Below are positions 7,873 to 54,179 of a stretch of 64,000 nt of DNA, one piece after another. Within the stretch, counting starts at the first letter, position 1. Each line of letters begins with the position of its first letter. The stretch is from positions 62,001 to 126,000 of the IMG/VR virus record IMGVR_UViG_3300036853_000446. One strand, written 5' to 3'. The position numbers were made by a program, and so were the translations under genes. Under the pieces are notes generated by a model that saw only the letters and a list, made by a program, of their open reading frames with translations, did not search any database and was not told the DNA's origin.

Positions 7873-10800
7873 TCAGGTGTACTCCACGCCCAGCTCGAGG
7901 AGCACCCAGTCCCCCGCCAACGTGTCGCTGACGTTCGTACCGACGCGGGTGAGTTCGTATTGAACGAACGTGCCCGCGCTCAAGCTCAAACTGGAGAGCG
8001 TAATGGTCTGCGAGTCATATTGAAAGTTTGTATTGGTCGGGATGCTGATCGCGGTGAGATTAGTTACCGAACTCCAGGCACCCACCGCAGCGTTGTCGGG
8101 AATCGTTCGACGGTAGAGAGCGGGGACCACGGCGACCGTCCCGCCGGGTGCCGTCTGCGCTCTGGATTTGAAATAGAGGGTGACGTTCGTTGCTCCAGGC
8201 GGAATGGTCTCGGACCAGCTGACACCCTCCTGAGTGGTATCGTCGAAGCGTCGCACCGAGAGCCCAATGTTCACTAGGTCCGCCGACAACGGCGCAAAGG
8301 CGTTGACGGTCCAGTTCGCGTTGACGGGGGAGGTGAGGTCCGCAGCCTGATACCACCGGCGCTGCAACGGAATGCTGTCGAGCTTCGTCTTGTCCGTAGC
8401 GACCATGAATCCGTTCACGGAAGTCGTCACCGCCGCATGCAAGGTGCCACTCGTCTGTGCCCCGTGATCGTGGACGTGGTCAGACCGGACAAAGGTCGTC
8501 GCCGCCCCGGCTGCGTTCGCCGTGCCGATGGCTACGGGGGCAGCTGCAGCGACCGTGTGTTGATGATCCGATCGAGCAAGTGTTGTGGCCGTCCCTTCAA
8601 CAGCCGAGTTGCCAACAGCCACAGCACCCGCGGCGGGAGTGGCTGTGGTGACGTCGTGCTTATGGTCGCTTCGCGCGGCATCCGTTGCGACACCCGCCAC
8701 AGCCGCCGCCTTGGTGACGTCGGCTGGGGCATTCGACGTCAGACCCACGACCTGAGTGACGGAGAAGGTCAGAGCCGTCGTACCGACGGTAATGGGGTCG
8801 TTTGTCGTGAGAATCGCGACATGGTCACCATTGGCGGCGCCTTCCGAGATTCGGATGATGACTGCAGCGCGGACCTCTGCATCGGCATCGAAGTCTACAG
8901 CACGGGACCAGGCGCCTGCAGCCACGGCATAGATGCCGTTCTGAGACCCGGTTGACTGATCTTTAGCCAGGACCCGATCTCCAGCAACGGCCGAAACTCC
9001 ATCAATAGTCTGCGTGCCGGACAGCGTCAGATTTGCCGTCGAAGCCAATCGCACTGGCTGCTTGATGGCCGTGACGGTGCTGTCTAGGTTTACCTTGTCA
9101 GCGGCGAGCATGAAGCCATTGGCAGAACTCGTGACGACGGCGTGCAGGGTGCCGCTCGTTTGAGCCCCATGATCGTGAACGTGGTCGGAACGGATAAAGG
9201 TCGTTGCTACTCCGGCTGCGTTTGCCGTTCCAATGGCGACCGGGACCGCTACTGCCACCGAGTGAGTATGGTCCGAGCGGGCTAGGGTGATTGCCGTGCC
9301 TTCCGCCGCCGAAGCTGCTGCCGTGATCGCGCCCACTACTGCCGTGGACACGTCGTGCTTGTGATCCGCTCGCGCAGCCGTCGCGCCCACCCCAACCGCT
9401 GCTGCAGCTTTGGTAACGTCACTAGGAGCTGTCGAGGCGAGCGCCGCAGCCCCCGTAGCCATTCCGTCGAGTCTGGTCTTGTCTGTCGCCGAAAGGAAAC
9501 CCGATACTGATGTCGTCGCAGCTGCATGCAGAGTGCCACTCGACTGTGTACCGTGATCGTGAACATGATCTGACCGAGCGAACGTAGTGGCCACCCCGGC
9601 CGAGTTGGCTATTCCAACGGCTACTGGAATACCGGCGGCTATCGAATGGGTATGATCAGAACGCGCCATCGTAACGGCGGAGCCCTCGGTTGCCAAATCG
9701 CCGATGGCCGCGACCCCAGCCGCCGCGGTAGCTATGTCGTGCTTGTGGTCGACTCGCGCAGCCGTCGTGCCTATCCCAACGGTTGCCGCAGCCTTGGTAA
9801 TGTCCACGGGTGCACTCGACGCCAGTGCCGCGGCAGCCGCCGAAACCCCATCGAGTTTGGTCTTGTCAGCGGCCAACATAAAGCCGTTGGCAGCACCCGT
9901 CACCACCGCATGCAACGTGGCAACGGTTTGAGCCCCGTGATCGTGTACGTGATCGGATCGAACAAAGGTCGCGGCAGATCCGGCCGAGTTGACTGTTCCA
10001 ATGGTCGAGGGGGCAACCACCGCAATCGTGTGTTGGTGGTCACTACGGGCTAGAGTCGTTGCCGTGCCCTCAGCAGCCGTGTTGCCAGCAGCAACGGCCC
10101 CAGCAACCGGCACCGCCGTCGTGACGTCGTGTTTATGATCGGCTCTTGCTGCGTCGGCAGCCGTCCCAACGACCGCTGTGCTCTTGGTAATGTCGACAGG
10201 AGCCGTCGAGGCAAGAGCGGCGGCACTGACCGCAACCCCGTCGAGTTTTGTCTTGTCAGCGGCCAGCATGAAGCCGTTGGTCAATCCCGTCACTGCCGAA
10301 TGAAGTGTCCCGCTCGTCTGGGCACCGTGGTCATGGACGTGGTCGGACCGGACAAAAGTCGTTGCCGTTCCAGCTGCGTTCGCAGTCCCGATGGCCACGG
10401 GCGTGGCTGCAGTGACCGTGTGCTGGTGATCTGAACGAGCTAGGGTGGTGGCAGTGCCTTCGGCTTCCGAGTTGCCGACCGCCACCGCACCGGTTACCGG
10501 CGTGGCCGTCGTGACGTCATGTTTATGGTCGGCTCTGGCTGCATCCGTCGCGACCCCGACCGCGGCCGCTGCCTTCGTCACATCTGCGGGGGCCGTCGAT
10601 GTCAGGGGCGCAGCGCCCGCCGAGACCCCGTCGAGTTTGGTCTTGTCCGAAGCCGACAGGAAACCAGCAACGGAGGTTGTCGCCGCGGCGTGGAGCGTCC
10701 CACTCGTCTGGGCACCATGGTCATGGACGTGATCAGACCGAACCAGCGTCGTGGCCGACCCGGTGGAGTTGGCCGTACCGATCGCTACAGGAACGGCTGC

Positions 10801-13101
10801 GGTAACCGTATGAGTGTGGTCCGAGCGCGCGAGCGAGGTAGCCGTCCCTTCTGCAGCGACGTTGCCGACGGCAACGGCTCCCGCCGCCGGGGTCGCTGTA
10901 GAGACGTCGTGTTTATGGTCGGCCTTGGCCGCATCCGTCGCGACCCCGACCGCGGCCGCTGCCTTCGTCACATCTGCGGGCGGAGCGGCGGTCAAGGTCA
11001 GAGCAACCGGAGTTGCAAACGCGAGACCCGTCACCGCTAAAGTGATCGGATCGTCCGTCGTCAGCTGGAAAAGCTTGTTTCCGTTGGCGGTGCCCTCAGA
11101 AACGGGGACGACCGTGCCGCCGCGAACCTCGCTGCTCGCGTCGAAATCCACAGCCCGAACCCAGGCACCAGCGGCGACTACATAGATGCCGTTTTGAGAC
11201 CCCGTCGACTGGTCCTTGACGAGCACACGCTGCGTCGCGATGACCGAGACGCCGTCGATCGTCTGAGGTGCAGAAAGGGTGATGTTGGCCGTCGTGGCCG
11301 CTCGGACCGGCTGCTTGATCGCCGTCGTGATGCTGTCAAAGTTGACTTTGTCAGCGGCGGACATGAAACCCGCAATCGCAGTCGTCGCCACCGCGTGCAG
11401 GGTGCCACTGGTTTGGGCACCGTGATCGTGAACGTGGTCACTCCGGGTGAATGTCGTTGCTGCTCCACCCGAGTTGGCTATACCAATAGCAACCGGAGTG
11501 CCCCCCGCCACCGAGTGGGTGTGGTCGCTCCGAGCTAGAGATACAGCCGTACCCTCGGTTGCGGCACCTCCGATGGCTACAGCGCCGGTCGCGGCCGTCG
11601 TGATGTCGTGCTTATGATCAGACCGGGCAAGCGACGTAGCCGTACCCTCGGCGGCGGCCGCCTTCGTAACGTTGACGGGGATGGCCGTTGAAATGTCATG
11701 CTTGTGATCTGCCCGGGCTGCGTCTGTAGCGACGCCCACGGCAGCGGCGGCCTTCGTGACGTCGACGGGTGCCGCGGCCGTCAAAGTTAGGGCGACGGGA
11801 GTTGCAAAGACGAGAGCTGTCGAGCCCAACGCGATCGGGTCGTCCGAGATGAGCTGGAAAATCCGATTCGCGTTCGTCGTACCTTCCGAGACGGCGACGA
11901 TGAGCCCACCTCGAACTTCGGCGCTATTGTCGAAATCTACAGAGCGAGTCCAGGCGCCCGTTGCAGCAACGTAAATGCCGTTGTTGGCTCCCGTGATCTG
12001 GTCCTTGACCAGGACCCGGTCAGCTGCGACGACGGACACGCCGTCGATCGTCTGAGTACCCGACAACGTGATGTTTGCGGTCGTGGCCGCCCGCACTGGC
12101 TGCTTGATCGCCGTGACCGTACTGTCGAAATCCGCCTTGTCAGCGGCAGACATGAACCCAGCCACGGAAGTAGTGACCACCGCGTGCAGGGTGCCGCTCG
12201 TCTGGGCACCATGATCGTGGACATGGTCACTTCGGGTGAACGTCGTTGCCGAGCCGGCGGCATTCGCCGTTCCAATCGCCACCGGGATCCCCCCAGCAAT
12301 CGAGTGGGTGTGGTCCGAGCGCGCGAGCGACGTCGCGCTACCTTCCGTAGCCGAATCCCCGATGGCGGCAGCTCCAACCGTAGCCGTTGTGATATCGTGC
12401 TGGTGGTCTGCCCGGGCCGCGTCGGTGGCCACCCCGACGGCAGCCGCTGCCTTCGTGACGTTGACCGGAGCCGACAGAGTGAGGGCTGCAGATCCCTCGG
12501 AGACCCCGTCGAGCTTGGTCTTGTCCGGAGCCGATAGGAAGCCTGCAACAGAGGTCGTGGCCACCGCATGAAGAGTGCCACTCGTCTGGGCTCCGTGGTC
12601 GTGGACGTGGTCGCTTCGGACAAAGGTCGCCGCAGAGCCTGCGGCATTCGCGGTGCCAACTGTGACCGGGTTGCCCCCTGCCACCGAGTGGGTATGATCC
12701 GAACGGGCTAAAGAAGTGGCCGATCCTTCGGCAGCAACGCCTCCAATGGACACGGCACCCGGGGTTGCCGTCGAGACATCGTGCTTGTGGTCTGCGCGTG
12801 CCGCATCCGTTGCAACACCGATGGCAGCTGCAGTCGTCGTAACATCGACGGGGGGCGTAGTAGTGAGCCCCGTGCTCCCCCCGACTCCGTCCCAAGTGGG
12901 CGTAATCGAGGTGAGGACCCAGAGCGTACTGTCGTCCTCTTGAAGTGCCAGTCGATCTAGGTCATCTACCGTCAGATTTCCAAGAATGGCGGGCACACCA
13001 ACGGTCGGCGTGAAGGCAACTCGACTCGCCGCGTTGGCAAACCTCCACGCAATAGGAGTGTGAGGTCCCTTAGCGATTGTAACTTTTCGATGCTCGCCCA
13101 T
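7873..13101 (-). CDS. Long tail fibre with nine His-x-His repeat modules (1742 aa)
   Basis: Nine ~125-155-aa units with ARADHKHD / ARSDHxH / RSDHVHDH, three copies of the QTIDGV..DRVLVKDQ..NGIY..GAW.R..D fibre domain, distinct C-terminal domain. Confidence 0.85.
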   Translation of the reverse strand: MGEHRKVTIAKGPHTPIAWRFANAASRVAFTPTVGVPAILGNLTVDDLDRLALQEDDSTLWVLTSITPTWDGVGGSTGLTTTPPVDVTTTAAAIGVATDAARADHKHDVSTATPGAVSIGGVAAEGSATSLARSDHTHSVAGGNPVTVGTANAAGSAATFVRSDHVHDHGAQTSGTLHAVATTSVAGFLSAPDKTKLDGVSEGSAALTLSAPVNVTKAAAAVGVATDAARADHQHDITTATVGAAAIGDSATEGSATSLARSDHTHSIAGGIPVAIGTANAAGSATTFTRSDHVHDHGAQTSGTLHAVVTTSVAGFMSAADKADFDSTVTAIKQPVRAATTANITLSGTQTIDGVSVVAADRVLVKDQITGANNGIYVAATGAWTRSVDFDNSAEVRGGLIVAVSEGTTNANRIFQLISDDPIALGSTALVFATPVALTLTAAAPVDVTKAAAAVGVATDAARADHKHDISTAIPVNVTKAAAAEGTATSLARSDHKHDITTAATGAVAIGGAATEGTAVSLARSDHTHSVAGGTPVAIGIANSGGAATTFTRSDHVHDHGAQTSGTLHAVATTAIAGFMSAADKVNFDSITTAIKQPVRAATTANITLSAPQTIDGVSVIATQRVLVKDQSTGSQNGIYVVAAGAWVRAVDFDASSEVRGGTVVPVSEGTANGNKLFQLTTDDPITLAVTGLAFATPVALTLTAAPPADVTKAAAAVGVATDAAKADHKHDVSTATPAAGAVAVGNVAAEGTATSLARSDHTHTVTAAVPVAIGTANSTGSATTLVRSDHVHDHGAQTSGTLHAAATTSVAGFLSASDKTKLDGVSAGAAPLTSTAPADVTKAAAAVGVATDAARADHKHDVTTATPVTGAVAVGNSEAEGTATTLARSDHQHTVTAATPVAIGTANAAGTATTFVRSDHVHDHGAQTSGTLHSAVTGLTNGFMLAADKTKLDGVAVSAAALASTAPVDITKSTAVVGTAADAARADHKHDVTTAVPVAGAVAAGNTAAEGTATTLARSDHQHTIAVVAPSTIGTVNSAGSAATFVRSDHVHDHGAQTVATLHAVVTGAANGFMLAADKTKLDGVSAAAAALASSAPVDITKAAATVGIGTTAARVDHKHDIATAAAGVAAIGDLATEGSAVTMARSDHTHSIAAGIPVAVGIANSAGVATTFARSDHVHDHGTQSSGTLHAAATTSVSGFLSATDKTRLDGMATGAAALASTAPSDVTKAAAAVGVGATAARADHKHDVSTAVVGAITAAASAAEGTAITLARSDHTHSVAVAVPVAIGTANAAGVATTFIRSDHVHDHGAQTSGTLHAVVTSSANGFMLAADKVNLDSTVTAIKQPVRLASTANLTLSGTQTIDGVSAVAGDRVLAKDQSTGSQNGIYAVAAGAWSRAVDFDADAEVRAAVIIRISEGAANGDHVAILTTNDPITVGTTALTFSVTQVVGLTSNAPADVTKAAAVAGVATDAARSDHKHDVTTATPAAGAVAVGNSAVEGTATTLARSDHQHTVAAAAPVAIGTANAAGAATTFVRSDHVHDHGAQTSGTLHAAVTTSVNGFMVATDKTKLDSIPLQRRWYQAADLTSPVNANWTVNAFAPLSADLVNIGLSVRRFDDTTQEGVSWSETIPPGATNVTLYFKSRAQTAPGGTVAVVPALYRRTIPDNAAVGAWSSVTNLTAISIPTNTNFQYDSQTITLSSLSLSAGTFVQYELTRVGTNVSDTLAGDWVLLELGVEYT
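8368..12864 (-). repeat. Intragenic tandem repeat array of the fibre gene
   Basis: About 390-nt period; exact 50-nt duplicate at 10541..10590 and 10931..10980. Confidence 0.9.
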
Positions 13102-44769: not shown

Positions 44770-45798
44770 TCAGGCCCCGACTCCCGATCCGCAAAATCGA
44801 CCGTCCGGGCCTTGGGAGGTTACCTCCCACCGCTTCCGAGTCTGATTGCGCACTAGCAAACTGAGCCACGCGCAATTGCAATGCCAATTCTGGGCCTCGC
44901 ATTCGGCGCATTGCCCGCAGGAATAATGCCCTTCCGTGTTCATCCGCGCCATCACGTAGGCGGACGAAGGGCGCTCGCCCATGTCTCGAAAGAACTCCTC
45001 GAAGGAATTCCGCCACCTCGAGCACACCGTGATCCCGATCCCGCCGTAGCGAGGATACCTATCGCTCCTAGAGTTAAAGCATCGCGTGTGAATGCCCACC
45101 CATGCTCGATACTCCGGAGTCTTGGTCATTCCGTGTCTGGTATTTGCGTGCGAAGGACCTGACCTGCACGGCCGACGATTCGTGTTCTGCTCAGCCCTCG
45201 TAGCCCACCGGACGTTGCCCGGCTCGTAATTCCCATCGTTATTGATTCGATCAAGTGAATGCTGGGGACTCGGCCGAGGCCCAACGTAGTTGTAAAAAGC
45301 CTGAAAGTCGTGGATCCACGCGGAGTGCATCCGAATGCCACGCCCGCCGTAATCGTCATAGGCGTGATGGTTGACATCGAAACAGCGCGACTTGATCGCA
45401 CCCCAGCATCTATGCTCCGGCTTATAGCTCATTCCGTGTCTGAAATTAGTGAGGCCTCCATTTCGCTCAACACCACTGACGACGGGCCACTGTGGCCGTC
45501 TTCCAGGTCTCCTCGGCCGGCAATTAGCTGCCTGTTCGACCCAAGTTGCCCAGCGCACGTTGCCTGGCTCGTAGTTACCCTCGTTGTTGATACGATCAAG
45601 CGAATGATCCGGAGACGGCTTCGGGCCCACGTGCTCATAGAACGCCTTGAAATCGTGCACCCATTCAGGATGCACCGTTATTCCGCGTCCGCCATAGTCA
45701 GGGTACCTTTGACTATTGCAATTCAAACACCGAGCTTTGATTTGACTCCAACAGTGGTATTCGGGGGTCTTACTCAACCCGTGTGATTTGACGGCCAT
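44770..45798 (-). CDS. HNH-like homing endonuclease-family protein with three tandem domains (342 aa)
   Basis: Three HG..K.PE...W..I..RC......Y..YGG.GI.....W...F..F....G..PS units; first two carry SLDRINN.GNYEPGNVRWAT. Confidence 0.8.
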   Translation of the reverse strand: MAVKSHGLSKTPEYHCWSQIKARCLNCNSQRYPDYGGRGITVHPEWVHDFKAFYEHVGPKPSPDHSLDRINNEGNYEPGNVRWATWVEQAANCRPRRPGRRPQWPVVSGVERNGGLTNFRHGMSYKPEHRCWGAIKSRCFDVNHHAYDDYGGRGIRMHSAWIHDFQAFYNYVGPRPSPQHSLDRINNDGNYEPGNVRWATRAEQNTNRRPCRSGPSHANTRHGMTKTPEYRAWVGIHTRCFNSRSDRYPRYGGIGITVCSRWRNSFEEFFRDMGERPSSAYVMARMNTEGHYSCGQCAECEAQNWHCNCAWLSLLVRNQTRKRWEVTSQGPDGRFCGSGVGA

Positions 45799-45860: not shown

Positions 45861-46577
45861 TCAAGTGATCTCGTCGCCGCCCCGTCCTTGCCACTGTGGC
45901 AATTTCACTTCGTGCAAAAGATTGAAGCCACGTTGCGCTATTTTACAGAAGATTGCTCGGTACGGCTCGTACTTTGAGTTTTGAGCAGCGATGTCTTCGA
46001 GCCGCGCCACCGCCTTGAAGAACCGGTGCCGCACCCTGCCTTGGGTCAAGTTCAGCTGCTGCGCGACGACGGACTGGCACGTGGTTTCCCACATATGAAT
46101 CAGGATCTGGACGTCGATGTGAATGCCATCGATCGTGCGCTGATCGCCCTCCTGGGATGCCTTCCCACCCGTCCGAGCTACGAAAACCTCAGACAAATCT
46201 ATCAGCATCTGCTCGCGCGACACGTCGGGGATCTCGAGCAAGAACTTGATTCGTTTGATGCCTCGCGCCAAACGATACGAGACCGCGGCCTGTGTCATGC
46301 CGAAGATCGTGGCAATGTCGGCCTGACGCTTGTCCATGAGGAAATACAACTCGATGATATCCGCCTCGCGCACGGGTATCCGCTCGAGGAGCGGGTGCAG
46401 CTTTACCTTGTATTCCTGAGTCTCGAGGAGGGCTCGCATCTCCGCGAGCTGCTCATTCTCCTCGATATCGGCCCGTTCATCCTCATCATTATCCGCCCAG
46501 CCATCATACCGCGGGTCGCAGAAAACGAAGCGGTTCAACTCATTGGGATCGATTGGAACGACGTAACCATTACTCAT
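45861..46577 (-). CDS. Sigma-70 region 4-like protein with two HTHs (238 aa)
   Basis: EADIIELYFL...QADIATIFGMTQAAVSYRL.R and QSVVAQQLNLTQGRVRHRF; no recognisable region 2. Confidence 0.7.
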   Translation of the reverse strand: MSNGYVVPIDPNELNRFVFCDPRYDGWADNDEDERADIEENEQLAEMRALLETQEYKVKLHPLLERIPVREADIIELYFLMDKRQADIATIFGMTQAAVSYRLARGIKRIKFLLEIPDVSREQMLIDLSEVFVARTGGKASQEGDQRTIDGIHIDVQILIHMWETTCQSVVAQQLNLTQGRVRHRFFKAVARLEDIAAQNSKYEPYRAIFCKIAQRGFNLLHEVKLPQWQGRGGDEIT

Positions 46578-46589
46578 GGAATCGACTCT

Positions 46590-48434
46590 CTAGGTAGACA
46601 CAGACGACCTGCCCAAAAGTGCCTGCATTATCGGCAGCGCCTTGATATCCAGGTCGTGTAGCTTCGCCGCAGCCGCGGCTTCATCTTCATCGGGTTCAAT
46701 CCTAGAGATGTTCACGTCGACGAGCGTCATGAGTTCCAGGTTGATTTTGACTTGGGCAGATGCCCCCATGACGCGCTCGTACTGTCCCTTGTTCAACGAC
46801 GCGAGGCCCGAAGCGTAGACCCGCTCGACGGAGCCGTGCTCCTGGATGAGGGTTCGCAATACCTTCTTCGGCACGCGCGGGACGCCCGGCAGATTGTCAG
46901 ACTTGTCTCCGAACAACGAACGTAGATGGATCACCTTTTCCGGAGGCACCCCTAACTGATAGACCACTCCCTGCACATCGTACAGCACTTCCTTCCGACT
47001 ACCAACGGCGGGAAAGAGGAACATCGTAGATGCGGTGACCAGTTGCAGGAAATCTCTGTCCGTCGAGCAGATCAAATTCGTCTGACCCTCGAGGTCGTGA
47101 CGCACCAACGTGGCCAACACATCGTCAGCTTCTTCCTCGGGGTTCCAAGCCTGTCTCACACCGAGCAACGGCAGCAGCTCACGCAGGAACCATAACGGGT
47201 TAAACGCGACGTCACCCACAACGACAGTCAGTTCCTTACGTGGCCGGTTGCCCTTGTAATCGCCATATTGCGCACGTCGCCGTCCCGAAGATCCATCCCA
47301 TGCAACCCAGAAGCAGGCCTCCGGATAACGCTTCCTCAGCGCACCGAGGCTCCGAAGGAAGCCCAGGATCATGCCCGTCGGACGCCCCTTCGCATCGGTC
47401 AGACGTGCGATACCGGGCGCAAACGCGCAGCGGAACGCCAGGTTGTGTCCATCGATCAACACGTTCTGAATCACCGCTTCATCCCCCTTGTCGCCGCGCG
47501 CCAAGTCGCGGACTAGATCTTCGACGCTCTGACTCATGGCGCGAATGCGATCCTCGATTTCACAGAGCCGCCGATACGTCTCGAACCTCGATCGCATCCG
47601 ACTCTGTGCCTCCGCCAGGCTGGCAAAATGCACCACGTTGAAAAGGCGCTGCCCTTGAACGTGCCAGTGCACGAGCGTCTTCAGCATTCCGAAGCGCTCG
47701 ACGATCCGAGCGTGTAAGGCGCGAAGCTCTCCGCCGCGTGGCGGGTAGCCGTAGAGAAACGAGTAGAGCAGGCGACCCGACCACAGCGAGCGAGACACGA
47801 AGACGTATGCGGTGAGGATTCTGAGCACGTCGTCGATGTCGCCACGATAGCCCAGCGTCGCCTTGGCCATCTTGAACCAAGCACGCAGGTACCCGAGTCG
47901 CGCGAAATACAAACTCAAGGGCGCGCGGTCCACGACCTTCAGGGCGCTCCGGGGAAGAGTGACGATGCTCTGCTTGCTCCGCAGCTCGATGTGAACCTGG
48001 ACTTTACGGTCCTCCAGGATCTCCGTAATGACCGTCGCTTCGATGTTCTTGTACGGGCCCGAGCAAATCAGCACGCTGTCGCCCACGCCAATGTCTTGAT
48101 TGACCTCAGCCCGGAGCTTCTCTTTTAGATCCTCGATGTAGGATCCGGTAACGGTCGCTATCTGACCACCGCGTCTCAAGACAGACTGAAAGAGCCGAGT
48201 CTCTTCGAGCCGGCGGTAATCTCGATCGGTACGTTCCCGCCGGACGAAGGCGTAGCCCGGCATGAGGTAGTGGACGTCCTTGTCCTCACCGACCTGTGTC
48301 TCGATTGCCGGGAGGTAGACATCACACTTGCCCAAGATCTTCGACGCCGCGGCGAAAACGACGGCCGGCGTCTCTTTCTCTCCCGACGGCGTCAACTCGA
48401 CGACGATCCACTGCGCGCCTTGGTCAGTTGCCAT
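46590..48434 (-). CDS. NusG-family (NGN+KOW) protein fused to a PolA/FEN-type 5'-3' exonuclease (614 aa)
   Basis: WIVV..., MPGYAFV, VGDSVLICSGPY; then LIDGHNLAFR, AWDG, YKGNR, EADDVLAT, STDRDFLQL, LFGDKSDNLPGV. Confidence 0.85.
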   Translation of the reverse strand: MATDQGAQWIVVELTPSGEKETPAVVFAAASKILGKCDVYLPAIETQVGEDKDVHYLMPGYAFVRRERTDRDYRRLEETRLFQSVLRRGGQIATVTGSYIEDLKEKLRAEVNQDIGVGDSVLICSGPYKNIEATVITEILEDRKVQVHIELRSKQSIVTLPRSALKVVDRAPLSLYFARLGYLRAWFKMAKATLGYRGDIDDVLRILTAYVFVSRSLWSGRLLYSFLYGYPPRGGELRALHARIVERFGMLKTLVHWHVQGQRLFNVVHFASLAEAQSRMRSRFETYRRLCEIEDRIRAMSQSVEDLVRDLARGDKGDEAVIQNVLIDGHNLAFRCAFAPGIARLTDAKGRPTGMILGFLRSLGALRKRYPEACFWVAWDGSSGRRRAQYGDYKGNRPRKELTVVVGDVAFNPLWFLRELLPLLGVRQAWNPEEEADDVLATLVRHDLEGQTNLICSTDRDFLQLVTASTMFLFPAVGSRKEVLYDVQGVVYQLGVPPEKVIHLRSLFGDKSDNLPGVPRVPKKVLRTLIQEHGSVERVYASGLASLNKGQYERVMGASAQVKINLELMTLVDVNISRIEPDEDEAAAAAKLHDLDIKALPIMQALLGRSSVST

Positions 48435-49824
48435 GATGCGCCCGCCGAAGAGCCTCTTTGAGAGTCGCCGTAAAATCCGACGCAGTCAGCCCGTTCGGGT
48501 GGTCATCGACGGGGGCGAACGTCAGCTCCACTTTCGGCTTGTGAACGGTTTTGGCCGAGCCCACCCCCTTCCCACGGGGCGCCAGCATACCCGCCTCGTC
48601 GATCGGAGTTCTGGGCGTGTTGCCGTCTCCGTAATTCTTGAGAGGCGTGGGGACAGGGGCTAAGTGAACGACGCTTGCCGCTCGGGGCGCGACCGGTGTG
48701 ATTGCCGCGACGGGCGGCGGTCCCGTCGGCAATGCAGGGGCTGCGATGGTGACGGGGAGTTGGACGACTCGCGAACTCGACGCCGCGGGGGGCACGCCGT
48801 CAGCGCCCAAGGCCACCGCCGCGCAGATCAAGTCGAGCCTGGAAACGTGAGCGCCCAAACTCAGGAAATACTTGGCGACGCCGACGGTGGCAGCGCCGTA
48901 CCGGGCGAACACTTGCGCGGCTCGGTCTCGATCCAACGCCGAGTAGTCCGTGAAGATCTTGCTCGCCTGCCGGTAGGCATTCATCGCCGCCTCCGCGATG
49001 CCCGTCGCGACTTGAAAGGGCCCCACCCGGTCACAAGCCCCCTCGAGCAGCTCGATCGCCCGGGAAGCGTCCCCCAGCGCCAAAAGGATATCGTAGTAGA
49101 GAGAGACCACGGTAAGGTCGAGTCTCTCCCGGACGGAGTCCATCGTGATGGCGCCGAGTTGCGCGATGGTCTCGAGCCGATTCAAGACGTCTCGCACATG
49201 CCCGCGCGCGTAGTCGATGACCGTCAGGATGGCGTCGTCCTCGTACTCGACGCCTTCCTGGGTAAGGATCTTTTGAACCCTTCCGAGGATGTCCTCCTTC
49301 TGAATCTTCCGGATCTCGTAGACTTCGCAGCGCGACTTGATCGTGTCCCGCAGCTTGGCGTACTCGGTCGTGCAGAACAGGACGACGACGCGGTTGTCTT
49401 CGATCGGCTTCAACAGGACGTCTTGGGCGTCGCGACTCATCCGATGCGCCTCGTCCAGGAGGTAGATGCGCTTGCGCACCCCCGGAACGTCGTACGCCAA
49501 ATGGTCAACGAGCCGCCGCATGTCGGCCGTCGTGCCCTGACTCGCGGCATCCAGCTCGGTGAGTGCCACCATCGTTTCGTTCAAACACGCCAGGCAGTGT
49601 TCGCACGCATTACAAGGGTCGCCGTCCTCCCGCGGCTGCAGGCAAAGGAGGGCTCTCGCCAAGATCCTTGCGAGGGTGGTCTTACCGGACCCATAAGGTC
49701 CCGAAAAGATGTAGGACGTGTTGAAGCCCTCACCTTTGAGCAGGCGCGCGCGAAGGACCCTGACAGAGCCCTCCTGACCCAGCACGTCGGCAAAGACGAG
49801 CGGTCTATAGCGTGTATCCCACAA
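48424..49824 (-). CDS. dnaX: DNA polymerase III gamma/tau-like clamp loader (466 aa)
   Basis: RYRP..F.DVLGQ, GPYGSGKTT, CxxC zinc module, ELDAAS, LLDEAH, LLKPIED, TIKSRC. Confidence 0.92.
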   Translation of the reverse strand: MWDTRYRPLVFADVLGQEGSVRVLRARLLKGEGFNTSYIFSGPYGSGKTTLARILARALLCLQPREDGDPCNACEHCLACLNETMVALTELDAASQGTTADMRRLVDHLAYDVPGVRKRIYLLDEAHRMSRDAQDVLLKPIEDNRVVVLFCTTEYAKLRDTIKSRCEVYEIRKIQKEDILGRVQKILTQEGVEYEDDAILTVIDYARGHVRDVLNRLETIAQLGAITMDSVRERLDLTVVSLYYDILLALGDASRAIELLEGACDRVGPFQVATGIAEAAMNAYRQASKIFTDYSALDRDRAAQVFARYGAATVGVAKYFLSLGAHVSRLDLICAAVALGADGVPPAASSSRVVQLPVTIAAPALPTGPPPVAAITPVAPRAASVVHLAPVPTPLKNYGDGNTPRTPIDEAGMLAPRGKGVGSAKTVHKPKVELTFAPVDDHPNGLTASDFTATLKEALRRAHHGN

Positions 49825-50398: not shown

Positions 50399-51103
50399 TT
50401 AGGCGCAACAACGCTTGATGAGGGCGCCCAAACGTTGGTCGCCCCAAACACTCCACAGCTCGTTCGGGTCCTTCGTATTGTGGCCCGAAGGCATGGGAAC
50501 CCGAGGGAACCTGACGATCTTGATCTTGAATTGGTCGCTCAATTCGCGCGCGATATCGTGAGCAACTTTATAGCCTGTCGTATCCATGTCATAAGCAACG
50601 AAGATGGTTCGTGCGACCCTGCGTAGGACTCGCCGCAGCTGGCTTGATACACCGGCGTGAAGCGTCGAGATGACATTCGGCACGTGACGTTGAATCGGGC
50701 ACAAATCGAAAACGCCCTCGACGAGCCAAACCTCTTCGGTCTCCCAAACGCTCGCCATGGCTTGGGCCAAGCCAAAGAATGCGGGCTCTTCTTTCGACTC
50801 GAAATAGTCGAGGTACCCTTTGATCTTCGGCTCGCGATCCCTAAACTGGAGCCCCAACACGACGCCGAGCGTGCTCGTCAGGGGGAAAACCAAGGGATCT
50901 TTGAACTGCTTTCTGTGGGCCGACCACCACGTGACAAATCGAGGATCACAACCAAGCCCCGTCGGAAGGCGGGCCCCCGGCAGGATCCCTATGTCGAAGG
51001 CGTCGATTTGTTCGTCGCTCACCCCGCGGCGCCAGAGCGCTTCTCGACTCTCGGCGACCATTTGCGCGTGCGCCGTCCCGACCATTTCCGTCATCCAGCT
51101 CAC
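50399..51103 (-). CDS. dnaG: DnaG-type primase catalytic core (TOPRIM), no zinc-binding domain (234 aa)
   Basis: FFGL, VWLVEGVFDL, AYDMDTTG. Confidence 0.75.
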   Translation of the reverse strand: MSWMTEMVGTAHAQMVAESREALWRRGVSDEQIDAFDIGILPGARLPTGLGCDPRFVTWWSAHRKQFKDPLVFPLTSTLGVVLGLQFRDREPKIKGYLDYFESKEEPAFFGLAQAMASVWETEEVWLVEGVFDLCPIQRHVPNVISTLHAGVSSQLRRVLRRVARTIFVAYDMDTTGYKVAHDIARELSDQFKIKIVRFPRVPMPSGHNTKDPNELWSVWGDQRLGALIKRCCA

Positions 51104-51711
51104 GAAGCGCCTCGGATCAGGAAGACCGCCTGATCGACTCGAGTCATCAGGACACCGACCGAGTCGTCGATGCGCGTATAGAATCCCAAGACGGACGGAG
51201 ACGCCGCCAGCAACGCATCGCCCTTGGCCAAATCAGCCACCAGGATTTGCTGGTCGCCCTTAGAGATGTACCCCTGGAGGCCCATCAGGCGATCCGCTTC
51301 CTCGCGCGTCATTGCGCTGACCTCTTCGACCAAACCATAGGGCACCACGATGCTGCGAGGCGGGAGCTGCATTCTGGCCGACGCCTCAGACAGCGAGTTA
51401 CACCGGTTCTGCCAACCATTCGTCCGGGACATCTCCCAGAGGGCATCGAAGAACTTCGGAAGGAGCGCGCCTTCATTTTCTGTCGAGCACTCGAAGAACC
51501 CGCAGCGCGCGACGCCTCGCTCGCGAGACACCCGAGTGGGCACGAGCCGACCCCGGGCATCCGTCGCGGCCAAAGGCTCAAAGCCCGCGTCGATGGGTCG
51601 CTCCGTAAACGCGGGAACGGCGAACCCTACTTTCAACGTTTCGTCGCTACGCCGCCGGTGACGCTCCGTAACCAATAGGCACTCGAGCGCGGTCTTCTTC
51701 GGGAAGGGCAT
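51100..51711 (-). CDS. Hypothetical protein (203 aa)
   Basis: Coupled to the primase gene by a 4-nt overlap. Confidence 0.6.
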   Translation of the reverse strand: MPFPKKTALECLLVTERHRRRSDETLKVGFAVPAFTERPIDAGFEPLAATDARGRLVPTRVSRERGVARCGFFECSTENEGALLPKFFDALWEMSRTNGWQNRCNSLSEASARMQLPPRSIVVPYGLVEEVSAMTREEADRLMGLQGYISKGDQQILVADLAKGDALLAASPSVLGFYTRIDDSVGVLMTRVDQAVFLIRGAS

Positions 51712-52258: not shown

Positions 52259-52956
52259 GGTCTCACCTTGCTCTTACGGTCGGCCGCGACCTGTTTGACG
52301 CGCAGCGCGCGCTGACCGCCGACGGCCTCTTCGTGACTCTCGTAGGCAAGGTCGGAATGGTCGCAGTACGCGGACTTATGGGTGATCAACAAGAAATGAA
52401 GATTCATACTTTGGGCCAATGCCTTGAGGAACTTCCCGGTCGGCGCGATGTACTCGTCCGAGACCGCCAACAGCGTCTCGTCCAGGACGAGGAAAGGGAG
52501 GCGCTCGAGCTTCAACAGAGTCAAAACACGAAGGAGCAGCGCGATGACACTCGACGCGCCCCCGCCGAAGCTCTCGAGCGGTCGACCCCGAACCGCCAGG
52601 GGGTCATCCGTGCCCCCCTGCCGCAGCTGAAACTCGATCGCGACCTTGTTGTATTTCGTCTCGATGTCCGACTCGAAATGCAAATCCTGGTCGAAGAATA
52701 TGGTTTGCAGTCCGTCCGTCACGATCGACTCCAGCGTTCTGACCTGCTTGACCACCAGCTGATCCATCAGGGCTCTAAAGAGTTCCTCGACTTTGAGTAG
52801 TTTCTCGACATCGCTCGTCAGCTTCTCGATCTCCGACGCCTTTTGCGTCCTATCCGCCAGCAGATGGTCTCGAAGAACCTCCACCTTCGCGGTTCGACGG
52901 CACAGCACGGCGAGCCGATCTATTGCTTCGACGGGACGTACCGCATTGCTCGACAT
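52255..52956 (-). CDS. sbcC: SbcC/Rad50 ATPase, C-terminal half (233 aa)
   Basis: Short coiled coil, signature-like SFGGG, Walker B FLVLDE, H-loop LLITH; no Walker A. Confidence 0.8.
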   Translation of the reverse strand: MSSNAVRPVEAIDRLAVLCRRTAKVEVLRDHLLADRTQKASEIEKLTSDVEKLLKVEELFRALMDQLVVKQVRTLESIVTDGLQTIFFDQDLHFESDIETKYNKVAIEFQLRQGGTDDPLAVRGRPLESFGGGASSVIALLLRVLTLLKLERLPFLVLDETLLAVSDEYIAPTGKFLKALAQSMNLHFLLITHKSAYCDHSDLAYESHEEAVGGQRALRVKQVAADRKSKVRP

Positions 52957-54179
52957 GCGTAGCCCTTTTGATCGACCGCGGGTTTCTCTACGTATTTCCC
53001 GCTCTCGTCGATGAAATAGTCCTCAATCACGCGAAACAAATGCTGCTTCGACTTTTTGACCTGAGCGATGCCCAGCATGACGTCGCGAGGATGCTTCGTC
53101 GCCTCGACGAGCTGGATCATCCAGTCGAGGTTGATGTGGAATTGGACGTCCTCCGTCTTGCTGAGGCTCCCAGAGCCCCAACAGCCCGGTTCACCCTCGA
53201 CGAGCGGCGTGACCGCCAACGGCAAAGACTCAATCTCGCCCCCCAAGGTGTTGCTCGCGACGACCGTCAGCAGGCACGTCGTGTGGTCGTAACGAACGAA
53301 CGCCTTGTTTTTATCCGCAGGCAAGGTGCTGCGAACGTATTTGAGTTCCTTCTCGAGGCTCGCCCGGCCGATCCTAAAGATATGATTGTCGAGCGCGAGA
53401 CCGTAATATCCGTATTTACTTCCGGCGTAGTCTTGGTTCGACCAACCGAGCACCTGCTCGGTCGAATTCATGAAATACGTCGAATTCTCGCTATTGTAGA
53501 CGTCGATGGTACCCGGCGATTTAGACAAGAACGACAGCAGCAGCGGGATCCGCGTACCGTAAACGAAGAGCGGCTTTCCCTCCAGCTCGGGACTGTAGAA
53601 ATAGCTCGTTCGACTCGTCGAGTGCCCCAGCATGTATCCGTTCCCATCGGCCTCGTCCGCGCCGAATAGCTGAACGTTGAGAAACTCTGGCTTCGCTAGC
53701 GCATCCTTCGGTTCCGCCAAGTAGGGTCGCGTCATGTTCAGAGCTTCCTTCAAGAGGACGCTGGGGAACGTGGCGACTTTCTTGGCGTTGCTGAAATCTG
53801 CGTCGAGCGCCTTGAGCGCCTTCGCGGTGAACGTGATGATCTTGTGAACACCCCCCTTGGCGCCGCCGGTGTCTCGTCGACACCAAACGACGTCAGCGCC
53901 GCCCTCCTCTCCGGACTCGAATTCGACCCATCCCTCGACGTAGCGCAGGTCCCCTTGTGGTCCCGTCGGAAAGACGAAGGCCCCTTCGCCCTCGACGTCA
54001 AACACGGGAATTGGCACGCGAAAGCGCTGGTGGCCGTCTTCGGAATACAGGTAGCAATGCTCGCCGCGCACGACGCAGAGATAGCCCGAGCTGCCTCGTG
54101 CATCGATGGAGGTCGGCGTGATCGACGAAACCAGGGCCAGCGCCGTGGTCCAGTCCTGTGTCAAAACTTTAAACTTCAT
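52920..54179 (-). CDS. dnaN: DNA polymerase III beta sliding clamp-like protein (419 aa)
   Basis: MKFKV....W..AL..V N-terminus, three-domain length, FHINLDWM near the clamp F-N motif; context with dnaX. Confidence 0.65.
   Translation of the reverse strand: MKFKVLTQDWTTALALVSSITPTSIDARGSSGYLCVVRGEHCYLYSEDGHQRFRVPIPVFDVEGEGAFVFPTGPQGDLRYVEGWVEFESGEEGGADVVWCRRDTGGAKGGVHKIITFTAKALKALDADFSNAKKVATFPSVLLKEALNMTRPYLAEPKDALAKPEFLNVQLFGADEADGNGYMLGHSTSRTSYFYSPELEGKPLFVYGTRIPLLLSFLSKSPGTIDVYNSENSTYFMNSTEQVLGWSNQDYAGSKYGYYGLALDNHIFRIGRASLEKELKYVRSTLPADKNKAFVRYDHTTCLLTVVASNTLGGEIESLPLAVTPLVEGEPGCWGSGSLSKTEDVQFHINLDWMIQLVEATKHPRDVMLGIAQVKKSKQHLFRVIEDYFIDESGKYVEKPAVDQKGYACRAMRYVPSKQ

What the first reader, a model, noticed from the sequence alone, without database searches (positions are those of the whole stretch)
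46590..48434. NusG-family transcription factor fused to a 5'-3' flap exonuclease, with a possible internal start
Seen: one ORF holds an NGN domain and KOW (first ~175 aa), a ~140-aa helical linker, then a complete PolA/FEN-type nuclease. The nuclease begins at an in-frame GTG (47474; MIQNVLIDGH) with AAGGGGG 8 nt upstream, so it may also be made alone. Known: specialised NusG paralogues (RfaH, LoaP, UpxY) give processive antitermination on long operons; FEN/PolA exonucleases remove RNA primers and R-loop flaps. Inference: an RNAP-tethered nuclease linking transcription to replication or R-loop processing, or an antiterminator for this very long one-strand gene array. I do not know of this fusion.
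Basis: partly seen in the sequence, partly recalled or inferred. Interest (0 to 1): 0.68.

Follow-up and report, generated by a model that had tools for sequence, protein, structure and literature searches.

The report
Huge-phage NusG factor fused to flap nuclease
A 407-kb uncultivated phage, and well over a hundred of its relatives, join a NusG-type RNA-polymerase elongation factor to the phage's only primer/flap-removing nuclease in one protein, which points to an undescribed physical link between transcription and DNA replication.

Summary
Window 46590-48434 (-) is one 614-aa ORF. It holds a NusG-type NGN domain, a KOW domain, a four-helix domain with no detectable relatives, and a complete Pol I-type 5' nuclease (FEN) with all its acidic metal ligands.

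The window lies in a 407,634-bp virus record. The fusion is not an artefact: at least 120 full-length homologues, down to 43% identity, share it. About 49 clusters at 50% identity are of fused length. The gene always lies between a DnaX-like clamp loader and a sigma-factor gene.

About ten related clusters appear split. Trees show the fused/split state changed at least twice.

The in-frame GTG at 47474 has one of the strongest Shine-Dalgarno matches in the window, but that signal is not conserved across the family.

Within the record, this is the only FEN and the only NusG-like gene. I found no phage RNA polymerase and no RNase HI. A related NGN-KOW module is fused to a sigma factor elsewhere.

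Best reading, which is inferred: the NGN docks on host RNA polymerase and carries the nuclease to RNA:DNA hybrids and flaps. I found no paper describing this.

The parts
46590..48434 (-). Whole ORF, 614 aa (P0001): NusG-like module, helical domain and FEN nuclease
48111..48419 (-). NGN domain (residues 6-108). Hallmark strand LMPGYAFV; L57, G60, Y61 and F63 are invariant in 35 homologues
   Evidence: Pfam NusG; PDB profile hit to 2lq8 at E 1.7e-8; 8pen_P RfaH NGN Z 10.1; alignment A1
47925..48098 (-). KOW domain (residues 113-170), predicted as a beta-barrel
   Evidence: Pfam KOW at about 20 bits; 2mi6 Z 9.7, rmsd 2.2 over 62 aa; model
47484..47921 (-). Four-helix domain (residues 172-317). 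It belongs to the NusG-like half in split relatives. No detectable relative of known function
   Evidence: models; split N-proteins of 312-386 aa contain it; no family, PDB or Atlas match
47483..47489 (-). Shine-Dalgarno-like AAGGGGG, 8 nt upstream of the in-frame GTG
   Evidence: sequence; duplex -10.5 kcal/mol, top 0.3% of in-frame sites in the gene
47472..47474 (-). In-frame GTG (V321), candidate internal start of a 294-aa stand-alone FEN
   Evidence: this column is Met in 36 of 118 homologues and Met lies within -4..-2 in 69 of 118; split relatives start their FEN gene at this junction
46959..47462 (-). FEN catalytic (resolvase-like) domain, residues 325-492. D328, D380, E435, D437, D438, D459 and D461 are invariant
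   Evidence: Pfam PF02739 E 5e-25; alignment A1; aligned to M. smegmatis Pol I 6vde (1e-44) and Taq (5e-37)
46716..46949 (-). FEN H3TH/SAM-fold domain, residues 496-573, with the invariant GDxSDNxPG motif (D510, D513)
   Evidence: Pfam PF01367 E 5e-13
46593..46652 (-). C-terminal tail, residues 595-614 (LPIMQALLG; family consensus P-I-L-x-A-F-F-G). Possible sliding-clamp-binding peptide; this is inference only
   Evidence: conserved in A1 and in cluster representatives; one stand-alone relative carries AFF followed by QLSLL; not tested
48424..49824 (-). Upstream gene: DnaX-like clamp loader. Its end overlaps the ORF's ATG by 11 nt. The neighbourhood is conserved
   Evidence: synteny in L088-L095 and L097
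45861..46577 (-). Downstream gene: sigma-70-family protein (region 4). It starts 12 nt after the ORF's stop, is a conserved neighbour, and is the only clear sigma in the record
   Evidence: synteny

Best explanation
The gene encodes a two-part protein of a huge phage that depends on the host's RNA polymerase.

Shown:
- The N-terminal 170 residues are a NusG-superfamily module (NGN plus a beta-barrel KOW).
- The C-terminal 290 residues are a Pol I-type 5' flap endo/exonuclease with a complete active site.
- A 145-residue helical domain joins the two.
- The arrangement is conserved across a large phage clade. It alternates in evolution with two overlapping genes cut at the same junction.
- Within the 407-kb record this is the only FEN and the only NusG-like gene. 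It sits in one co-oriented gene string between a clamp loader and a sigma factor.

Inferred:
- The NGN docks on the beta' clamp helices of the host elongation complex, at the upstream fork of the bubble, as NusG-family NGN domains studied so far do.
- The helical domain holds the nuclease near the upstream DNA and the emerging RNA.
- There the nuclease can remove RNA:DNA hybrids and 5' flaps that arise where heavy co-directional transcription meets phage replication. Candidates are R-loops, transcripts used as primers and RNA left after fork-RNAP encounters.
- The same catalytic domain also does ordinary Okazaki primer removal, since the phage's Pol A lacks a 5' nuclease. For this it would act either as the fusion, through its C-terminal clamp-like tail, or as a free 33-kDa product started at GTG 47474.
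For: Architecture.

Conservation:
- The word search gave 372 hits. The best 120 are all 557-640 aa and cover 90-100% of the query.
- The exhaustive profile search gave about 49 clusters of fused length and about 10 that appear split, at 50% identity. At least one of the 13 short representatives counted at first (P0274) is a truncated fused form.

Catalytic competence: the acidic residues and the YK..R motif are invariant.

Selection for association:
- The order clamp loader, NusG/FEN, sigma is conserved in every relative whose context was read.
- Split forms keep the two genes overlapping: a GTGA overlap in L094, 44 nt in L093 and 26 nt in L097.
- The fused/split state changed at least twice on the trees.

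Transcription role of the module:
- The sigma gene is always adjacent.
- The same NGN-KOW type is fused to a sigma-70 r2+r4 protein in P0305.
- The closest stand-alone relatives are 160-200-aa NusG-like proteins.
- PHROG 6386 'transcription antiterminator' matches.

Dependence on host RNAP: no RNAP beta or T7-type RNAP was found in the record.

Replication role of the nuclease: it is the sole PF02739 hit. Pol A is present without a 5' nuclease. No RNase HI was found. Primase, RecA, Mre11/Rad50-like and RecD2 genes lie nearby.

Position of the NGN on the elongation complex: 10.1101/324400.

Precedent: Spt5 bridges the 5'-to-3' nucleases Xrn2 and FttA to elongation complexes (PMC11695829; PMC11616081).

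Internal start.
Against: - No binding or nuclease activity was tested, and the host is unknown.
- The NGN-KOW scores far below the NCBIfam cut-offs for NusG, RfaH, LoaP and UpxY. Its RNAP contacts may therefore differ.
- Split relatives show that covalent linkage is not required. My one complex prediction for a split pair gave no answer.
- A FEN needs a free 5' end, which an R-loop does not offer by itself.
- Absences (RNAP, RNase H, clamp, a second FEN) hold only for a record estimated at 86% complete.
- The SD at the internal GTG is not conserved family-wide.
- Adjacent, translationally coupled genes can fuse without any mechanistic coupling.
Confidence: 0.4

Rival explanations
1. Two independent jobs on one chain. 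The NusG-like half is a phage processivity or antitermination factor for host RNAP on the long one-strand gene arrays. The FEN half is simply the replisome's primer-removal nuclease. They are fused only because they were adjacent, translationally coupled genes, so that fusing them costs nothing or fixes a 1:1 ratio. The nuclease never acts at RNAP.
For: - Split relatives with overlapping genes exist, and the state flips repeatedly.
- All long ORFs of the window are on one strand.
- PHROG 6386 'transcription antiterminator' matches.
- The FEN is closest to Pol I 5' nucleases and lies in a replication module.
- The possible internal start would free the nuclease.
Against: - The pairing of these two genes is kept in all relatives whose context was read, from 43 to 79% identity. 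The fused state dominates, about 49 against about 10 clusters.
- More distant stand-alone FENs in other phages have no NusG-like neighbour, so the pairing is specific to this lineage.
- The 145-aa helical domain is conserved in length in both states, although it has no role in this model.
Confidence: 0.3
2. Covalent 'torpedo' or nascent-RNA nuclease. The NGN-KOW places the 5' nuclease at the RNA exit so that it degrades nascent RNA 5' to 3'. This would terminate or clear host or phage transcription complexes, as Spt5-Xrn2 and Spt5-FttA do.
For: - Spt5 bridges 5'-to-3' nucleases to elongation complexes in eukaryotes and archaea.
- The KOW domain lies directly before the spacer and the nuclease.
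- No Rho-like or other terminator function was looked for or seen in the operon.
Against: - The nuclease is a Pol I-type FEN: 150 bits to the Pol I N-terminus, 6vde at 1e-44. From general knowledge, its known substrates are 5' flaps and RNA in hybrids, not free single-stranded RNA.
- It is the phage's only FEN, so replication needs it.
- It carries a clamp-like C-terminal tail.
Confidence: 0.12
3. Replication-coupled transcription switch. The FEN half binds sliding clamps left at nicks and flaps on newly replicated DNA, and the NGN half recruits or holds RNAP there. This would couple late transcription, with the neighbouring sigma, to replication. The known analogue, from general knowledge and not tested here, is T4 gp45 clamp with gp33 and gp55.
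For: - The operon order clamp loader, NusG/FEN, sigma is conserved.
- The C-terminal hydrophobic tail ending in FFG is conserved.
- A sigma::NGN-KOW fusion exists in a relative.
Against: - No sliding clamp was detected in the record.
- Clamp binding by the tail is untested.
- The nuclease active site is fully conserved, which a mere adaptor would not need.
- From general knowledge, NGN domains bind elongating RNAP, not initiating RNAP.
Confidence: 0.1
4. Artefact: a lost stop codon or a frameshift in this one assembly joined two genes.
For: Some relatives do have two genes.
Against: At least 120 independent full-length homologues come from JGI, ENA, NCBI and Logan assemblies. The same open junction is seen in 13 other DNA loci.
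Confidence: 0.01

Closest known systems
Bacterial NusG and its specialised paralogues (RfaH, LoaP, UpxY); PHROG 6386 phage 'transcription antiterminator'
   Same: It has the NGN fold and a beta-barrel KOW domain, the hallmark strand (L/F)xGY(A/V)FV, and the KOW motif G(D)xVxIxxGP(Y/F). The best structural matches are NusG, RfaH and Spt5. PHROG 6386 matches at E 6e-9.
   Different: It scores 24-34 bits against equivalog cut-offs of 100-145, so it belongs to none of the named paralogue families. It carries a 145-aa helical domain and a nuclease after the KOW. It is phage-encoded. No ops-type recruitment element or alpha-helical CTD is evident.
5' nuclease domain of bacterial DNA polymerase I and stand-alone FENs (Taq and M. 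smegmatis Pol I, FenA/ExoIX/Xni, T5 FEN, T4 RNase H)
   Same: Both Pfam domains score above their cut-offs. All the metal-binding acidic residues and the H3TH motif are present. The best matches are Pol I 6vde (1e-44) and Taq (5e-37).
   Different: The nuclease is attached on its N-terminal side to a transcription factor, not on its C-terminal side to a polymerase. The phage's Pol A is a separate gene about 265 kb away.
Spt5-Xrn2 (eukaryotes) and Spt4/5-FttA (archaea) pre-termination complexes
   Same: A NusG-family factor bridges a 5'-to-3' nuclease to the elongation complex (PMC11695829; PMC11616081).
   Different: Those complexes are non-covalent, use Xrn or beta-CASP ribonucleases, and act on nascent RNA to terminate transcription. 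Here the link is covalent or between overlapping genes, and the nuclease is a DNA-replication-type FEN. Function is untested.
T4 replication-coupled late transcription (gp45 clamp, gp44/62 loader, gp33, gp55 sigma); from general knowledge
   Same: A phage operon logic that joins a clamp loader, a sigma factor and a protein that could touch both RNAP and the clamp.
   Different: There is no homology to gp33 or gp55. No clamp was found. The nuclease is catalytically intact.
Sigma-70::NGN-KOW fusion P0305, found here
   Same: It has the same NGN-KOW subtype (E 3e-39 to the family profile) on a phage-like contig.
   Different: Its partner domain is a sigma factor (r2+r4) on the N-terminal side. 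There is no helical domain, no FEN in the protein, and no FEN among the called neighbours.

Membership tests
NusG/Spt5 superfamily | NGN alpha/beta fold | tested here: met
   Residues 6-108 match RfaH NGN 8pen_P (Z 10.1, rmsd 3.2 over 97 aa). Top Foldseek hits are NusG 1m1g, 6gov_G and RfaH 8phk.
NusG/Spt5 superfamily | KOW beta-barrel following the NGN | tested here: met
   Residues 105-168 match 2mi6 (Z 9.7, rmsd 2.2 over 62 aa). Pfam KOW scores 19.7-20.2 bits, just under the 22.3 cut-off.
NusG/Spt5 superfamily | Pfam PF02357 gathering score | tested here: inconclusive
   24.4 bits on the piece 1-190 and 21.4 bits on the whole protein, against a cut-off of 22.2. The family profile against PDB NusG gives E 1.7e-8.
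NusG/Spt5 superfamily | Binds the beta' clamp helices and beta gate loop of the elongation complex | not testable with these tools
   This is inferred only, from fold, from the conserved GYxFV strand and from the sigma association. The host is unknown.
NusG, RfaH, LoaP, UpxY (named paralogue families) | NCBIfam equivalog or subfamily cut-off | tested here: not met
   NusG 33.6 bits against 135.7; RfaH 33.2 against 144.5; LoaP 27.2 against 125; UpxY 24.1 against 100.
RfaH | Autoinhibited alpha-helical CTD and recruitment by an ops element | tested here: inconclusive
   The models predict a beta-barrel KOW, not a helical hairpin. A prediction cannot exclude fold switching. No ops search was made.
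Pol I-type 5'-3' exonuclease / FEN | PF02739 and PF01367 above their cut-offs | tested here: met
   88.5 bits against 34.3, and 49.8 bits against 40.
Pol I-type 5'-3' exonuclease / FEN | Two-metal acidic cluster and the YK..R motif | tested here: met
   D328, D380, E435, D437, D438, D459, D461, D510, D513, Y393, K394 and R397 are invariant in 35 sequences. They align to the Taq and M. smegmatis Pol I 5' nucleases.
Pol I-type 5'-3' exonuclease / FEN | Structure-specific 5' nuclease activity | not testable with these tools
   This needs an enzyme assay.
DNA polymerase I | Family A polymerase domain on the same chain | tested here: not met
   There is no PF00476 in this ORF. The only Pol A of the record is at G000:C1:374187-375494.
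Torpedo-type termination nucleases (Xrn2, FttA/CPSF73, RNase J) | Xrn or beta-CASP/metallo-beta-lactamase catalytic domain | tested here: not met
   Only FEN domains were found.
Clamp-binding replication enzymes | C-terminal clamp-binding peptide that binds a sliding clamp | tested here: inconclusive
   The tail consensus PILxAFFG is conserved. No clamp was found in the record. Binding was not tested.

The most novel reading that the evidence does not exclude
The protein is a covalent coupler of transcription and nucleic-acid cleavage in a bacterial virus. A NusG-family factor carries its own 5' nuclease onto the elongation complex. It would be the bacterial-world counterpart of Spt5-Xrn2 and Spt5-FttA. 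It would act on nascent RNA or RNA:DNA hybrids at RNAP, either to terminate or clear polymerases ahead of phage replication forks, or to convert transcripts into removable replication primers.
Probability: 0.2. Interest if true: 0.85.

Novelty: new variant of a known kind. Interest (0 to 1): 0.66.

Why it matters
From general knowledge, NusG/Spt5 is the only transcription factor conserved in all domains of life. Its KOW side is known to recruit Rho, ribosomes, Xrn2 or FttA. A NusG-family protein permanently joined to a replication-type flap nuclease has, as far as I could find, not been described.

This family is kept across a large clade of 300-500-kb phages, next to their clamp loader and sigma factor. 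If the nuclease acts at RNA polymerase, it would be a direct molecular link between transcription and replication or R-loop processing. How a very large, one-strand-coded genome avoids transcription-replication conflicts would then become testable with a single protein.

The natural fused/split pairs and the sigma::NGN-KOW fusion are ready-made controls for such experiments. Even the ordinary reading has value: it defines a new, large phage branch of the NusG family with an uncharacterised helical domain.

Tried and rejected
1. Complex prediction on the natural split pair of L094 (312-aa NusG-like protein plus 289-aa FEN, with alignments A3 and A4) returned 'no answer', score 0.00. It counts neither for nor against binding.
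No read-level or expression check was made and read laying was not used.
3. The search for related loci with the single protein found nothing. With the alignment it gave 9 full-length loci.
4. Family-wide conservation of the internal SD is not supported. Apart from the window (top 0.3%), L088 (4%) and L009 (6%), the junction start codons have ordinary SD scores.
5. Sliding clamp: PF00712 and PF02768 were absent from the record. The conserved unknown neighbours at 52920-54179 and 51100-51711 gave no PDB or PHROG match.
6. Helical domain: no Pfam, PHROG, PDB-sequence or Atlas match.
7. A promoter/terminator scan of the operon found nothing above shuffled expectation.
8. Literature: four searches and two full-text look-ups found no paper on a NusG-FEN fusion.
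9. A first word search with the N-terminal part alone found no stand-alone homologues. The exhaustive profile search then found them, so the blank was a sensitivity limit.
10. P0130 and P0121 looked like short or split forms. They are fused ORFs for which the gene caller chose a later start.
Full report
WHAT IS THERE

Window 46590-48434 on the minus strand is a single 614-aa open reading frame, starting at ATG 48434. The window is part of a 407,634-bp IMG/VR virus record (G000:C1:62001-126000). The record is about 60% G+C and estimated 86% complete. All long ORFs of the window lie on the minus strand.

The C-terminal 290 residues are a Pol I-type 5' nuclease:
- Pfam gives 5_3_exonuc_N at 325-492 (E 5e-25) and 5_3_exonuc at 496-573 (E 5e-13).
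- NCBIfam gives its best match to the N-terminus of DNA polymerase I, 150 bits.
- A family profile hits M. smegmatis Pol I (6vde, 1e-44) and Taq polymerase (5e-37).
- Every acidic metal ligand is invariant in 35 homologues: D328, D380, E435, D437, D438, D459, D461, D510 and D513. So are Y393, K394 and R397.

The N-terminal 170 residues are a NusG-superfamily module. By single-sequence Pfam the hit is borderline: NGN 24.4 or 21.4 bits against 22.2, and KOW about 20 bits against 22.3. Three lines of evidence make it firm:
- A profile of the family hits T. maritima NusG at E 1.7e-8.
- In an AlphaFold model (pLDDT 82), residues 6-108 superpose on the RfaH NGN in an elongation complex (Z 10.1, rmsd 3.2 over 97 aa). 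Residues 105-168 superpose on a NusG KOW barrel (Z 9.7, rmsd 2.2 over 62 aa).
- The 30 best Foldseek hits are all NusG, RfaH or Spt5.

Residues 172-317 between the two parts form four long helices. I found no relative for them in Pfam, PHROGs, PDB sequences or the ESM Atlas. I could not fold this part alone, so its fold remains untested.

THE FUSION IS REAL AND OLD

The word-indexed protein search returned 372 hits. The best 120 are all 557-640 aa, cover 90-100% of the query and go down to 43% identity. They sit on contigs of up to 475 kb from JGI, ENA, NCBI and Logan assemblies. JGI's pipeline already labels many of them '5'-3' exonuclease/transcription antitermination factor NusG'.

An exhaustive profile search with the N-terminal half found about 49 clusters of fused length (540-690 aa) at 50% identity. 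It also found 13 clusters of 285-386 aa that cover the NusG-like part and the helical domain only. At least one of those 13 (P0274) is a fused form cut by a contig end, and ten were usable as split forms in the tree.

Three split cases were confirmed in DNA:
- In L094 a 312-aa NGN-KOW-helical gene ends in a GTGA overlap with a 289-aa FEN gene.
- In L093 a 380-aa gene overlaps a 309-aa FEN gene by 44 nt.
- In L097 a 386-aa gene overlaps a 297-aa FEN gene by 26 nt.

Two other apparent short forms, P0130 and P0121, are fused ORFs with a gene-caller start set too late.

On a FEN-domain tree the main fused group is one clade (SH-aLRT 99), nested among short FENs. The more basal short FENs, P0169 and P0175, lie in unrelated contexts without a NusG-like neighbour. 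On an NGN-KOW tree the fused and split states are interleaved. Well-supported branches force at least two changes, and the best tree needs six or seven. These are quick trees, so only the qualitative point is safe: the junction has opened and closed more than once.

Relatives are not always two genes. Most are fused.

CONTEXT

In every relative whose neighbourhood I read (L088-L095 and L097; 43-76% identity for those with a full-length match) the gene order is the same. It runs: Mre11/Rad50-like, PD-(D/E)XK nuclease, five small unknowns, Toprim primase, phage metallopeptidase, DnaX-like clamp loader, NusG/FEN, sigma-70-family protein.

In the window the clamp-loader gene overlaps the ORF's ATG by 11 nt, and the sigma gene starts 12 nt after its stop. 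No promoter-like or terminator-like signal above background lies between them.

Within the 407-kb record:
- This is the only 5_3_exonuc gene and the only NusG-like gene.
- The only clear sigma is the neighbouring gene.
- There is a family A DNA polymerase without a 5' nuclease.
- I found no RNase HI, no RNAP beta-like subunit, no T7-like RNAP and no beta clamp.

These absences are limited by the 86% completeness and by what Pfam models can see. The T7-like RNAP model (PF00940) in particular matched none of the control genomes, so that search says little.

THE INTERNAL START

Paired with the anti-SD sequence this gives -10.5 kcal/mol. Only 0.3% of in-frame sites in the gene and 0.7% of positions on the strand are as strong. 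Of 44 candidate ORF starts in the window only one is stronger, and the gene's own ATG scores -5.5.

Across 118 homologues, 69 have Met two to four residues before the conserved QN(V)(L)(V)DG strand, against a background Met frequency of 1.3%. Most of the others have Val there. Among 46 representatives at 50% identity, 12 have Met in that one column. In DNA, 13 of 15 fused loci have an in-frame ATG or GTG within eight codons of the strand. The split relatives start their FEN genes at this same junction.

Against this, the SD-like signal is strong only in the window, in L088 and in L009, and is ordinary elsewhere. A Met or Val here could also be a relic of the ancestral FEN start, or simply a hydrophobic strand residue. 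I put the chance that this phage makes a separate 33-kDa FEN at about 0.4.

HOW IT MOST LIKELY WORKS

Shown:
- The domain architecture.
- An intact nuclease site.
- A long-term and lineage-specific association of the NusG-like gene with the FEN gene, either as one chain or as overlapping genes.
- Placement between a clamp loader and a sigma factor.

Also shown: the same NGN-KOW subtype (E 3e-39 to the family profile) is fused to the C-terminus of a sigma-70 r2+r4 protein on another phage-like contig (P0305). The nearest stand-alone relatives are 160-200-aa NusG-like proteins. These two findings tie the module to RNA polymerase rather than to the replisome.

From established knowledge, NGN domains bind the beta' clamp helices and the beta gate loop. 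[quoted passage not shown]

My inference has four steps:
- The NGN docks on the host elongation complex.
- The helical domain spaces the nuclease towards the upstream DNA and the emerging RNA.
- The nuclease removes RNA:DNA hybrids or 5' flaps created where intense co-directional transcription meets phage replication.
- The same catalytic domain also serves as the phage's Okazaki-primer nuclease. For this it would act through its conserved C-terminal PILxAFFG tail, which looks like a clamp-binding peptide (untested), or as a free product from the internal start.

Confidence in this mechanism is about 0.4.

The rivals are:
- Independent functions merely co-expressed (0.3).
- A torpedo-like nuclease acting on nascent RNA, for which Spt5-Xrn2 and Spt5-FttA are non-covalent precedents (0.12).
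- A T4-like coupling of RNAP to clamps on replicated DNA (0.1).
- An assembly artefact (0.01).

COMPARISON AND NOVELTY

The N-terminal module is a member of the NusG/Spt5 superfamily by fold. It belongs to none of the named paralogue families, scoring 24-34 bits against cut-offs of 100-145. The C-terminal module is a bona fide Pol I-type FEN. The protein is not a Pol I, because it has no polymerase domain.

I found no paper describing a NusG-FEN fusion, nor a mention of NusG in two huge-phage surveys. Automatic annotation has noticed the two COG hits. I therefore rate it a new variant of a known kind: a new domain architecture and a new, large phage branch of the NusG family, with an uncharacterised helical domain.

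LIMITS

- No binding, activity or expression evidence exists.
- The host is unknown.
- The single complex prediction gave no answer.
- The trees are quick trees.
- Some 'split-length' cluster representatives may be truncated by contig ends, as P0274 clearly is.

Noticed in passing
L098:3612-5237 (protein P0305): A 541-aa protein joins a sigma-70 factor (regions 2 and 4) through a proline/lysine-rich repeat to the same NGN-KOW subtype (residues 326-492). It lies on an 18-kb phage-like contig with Ku and helicase genes. From general knowledge, sigma region 2 and NGN domains compete for the beta' clamp helices, so this looks like a built-in hand-over from initiation to elongation.
   Followed up: partly
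window 44770-45798 (-): A 342-aa protein made of three tandem HNH-endonuclease repeats (PHROG 374/3377, E 1e-91) lies just downstream of the sigma gene. Relatives have no such gene at this spot. L090 has an Endonuclease_7 gene there instead. It looks like a homing-endonuclease insertion site.
   Followed up: partly
L090:5296-7998; L089:15866-17806: In relatives the DnaX-like clamp loader is 900 aa long, with intein-splicing and LAGLIDADG hits. An MJ0330_N-family protein likewise carries a LAGLIDADG insert. These are inteins in the replication module of the clade; the window's clamp loader (466 aa) has none.
   Followed up: no
window 48424-49824 (-) and the whole record G000: The phage encodes a DnaX-like clamp loader (TIGR02397, 219 bits), but Pfam finds no beta clamp in the 407-kb record. 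Either it loads the host clamp, or one of the conserved unknown neighbours (for example the 419-aa protein at 52920-54179) is a divergent clamp.
   Followed up: partly
L093:4902-6041, L097:4866-6023: The split NusG-like proteins of this subclade carry about 60 extra C-terminal residues ending in a strongly basic tail (for example ...ERKRRAAKRRR). The fused forms and the L094-type split form lack this.
   Followed up: no
C-termini of FEN homologues: Many family members end with two short motifs, (A/P)FF and then GFxK(T/E)(S/G), about 8-14 residues apart. The window's subclade keeps only the first, as ALLG/AFFG. One stand-alone relative (P0169) has AFF followed by QLSLL, a classic beta-clamp motif.
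   Followed up: no
window 45861-46577 (-): The conserved sigma-family neighbour (238 aa) shows only region 4 clearly (residues 60-111), plus a second weak region-4-like stretch near residues 158-195. No region 2 was detected, so it may be a very divergent or partial sigma.
   Followed up: no
window 1-64000: Every ORF of 280 aa or more that is not shadowed by a longer ORF lies on the minus strand. Cumulative GC skew falls almost monotonically across the window. A 1742-aa ORF at 7873-13101 (-) was not examined.
   Followed up: no
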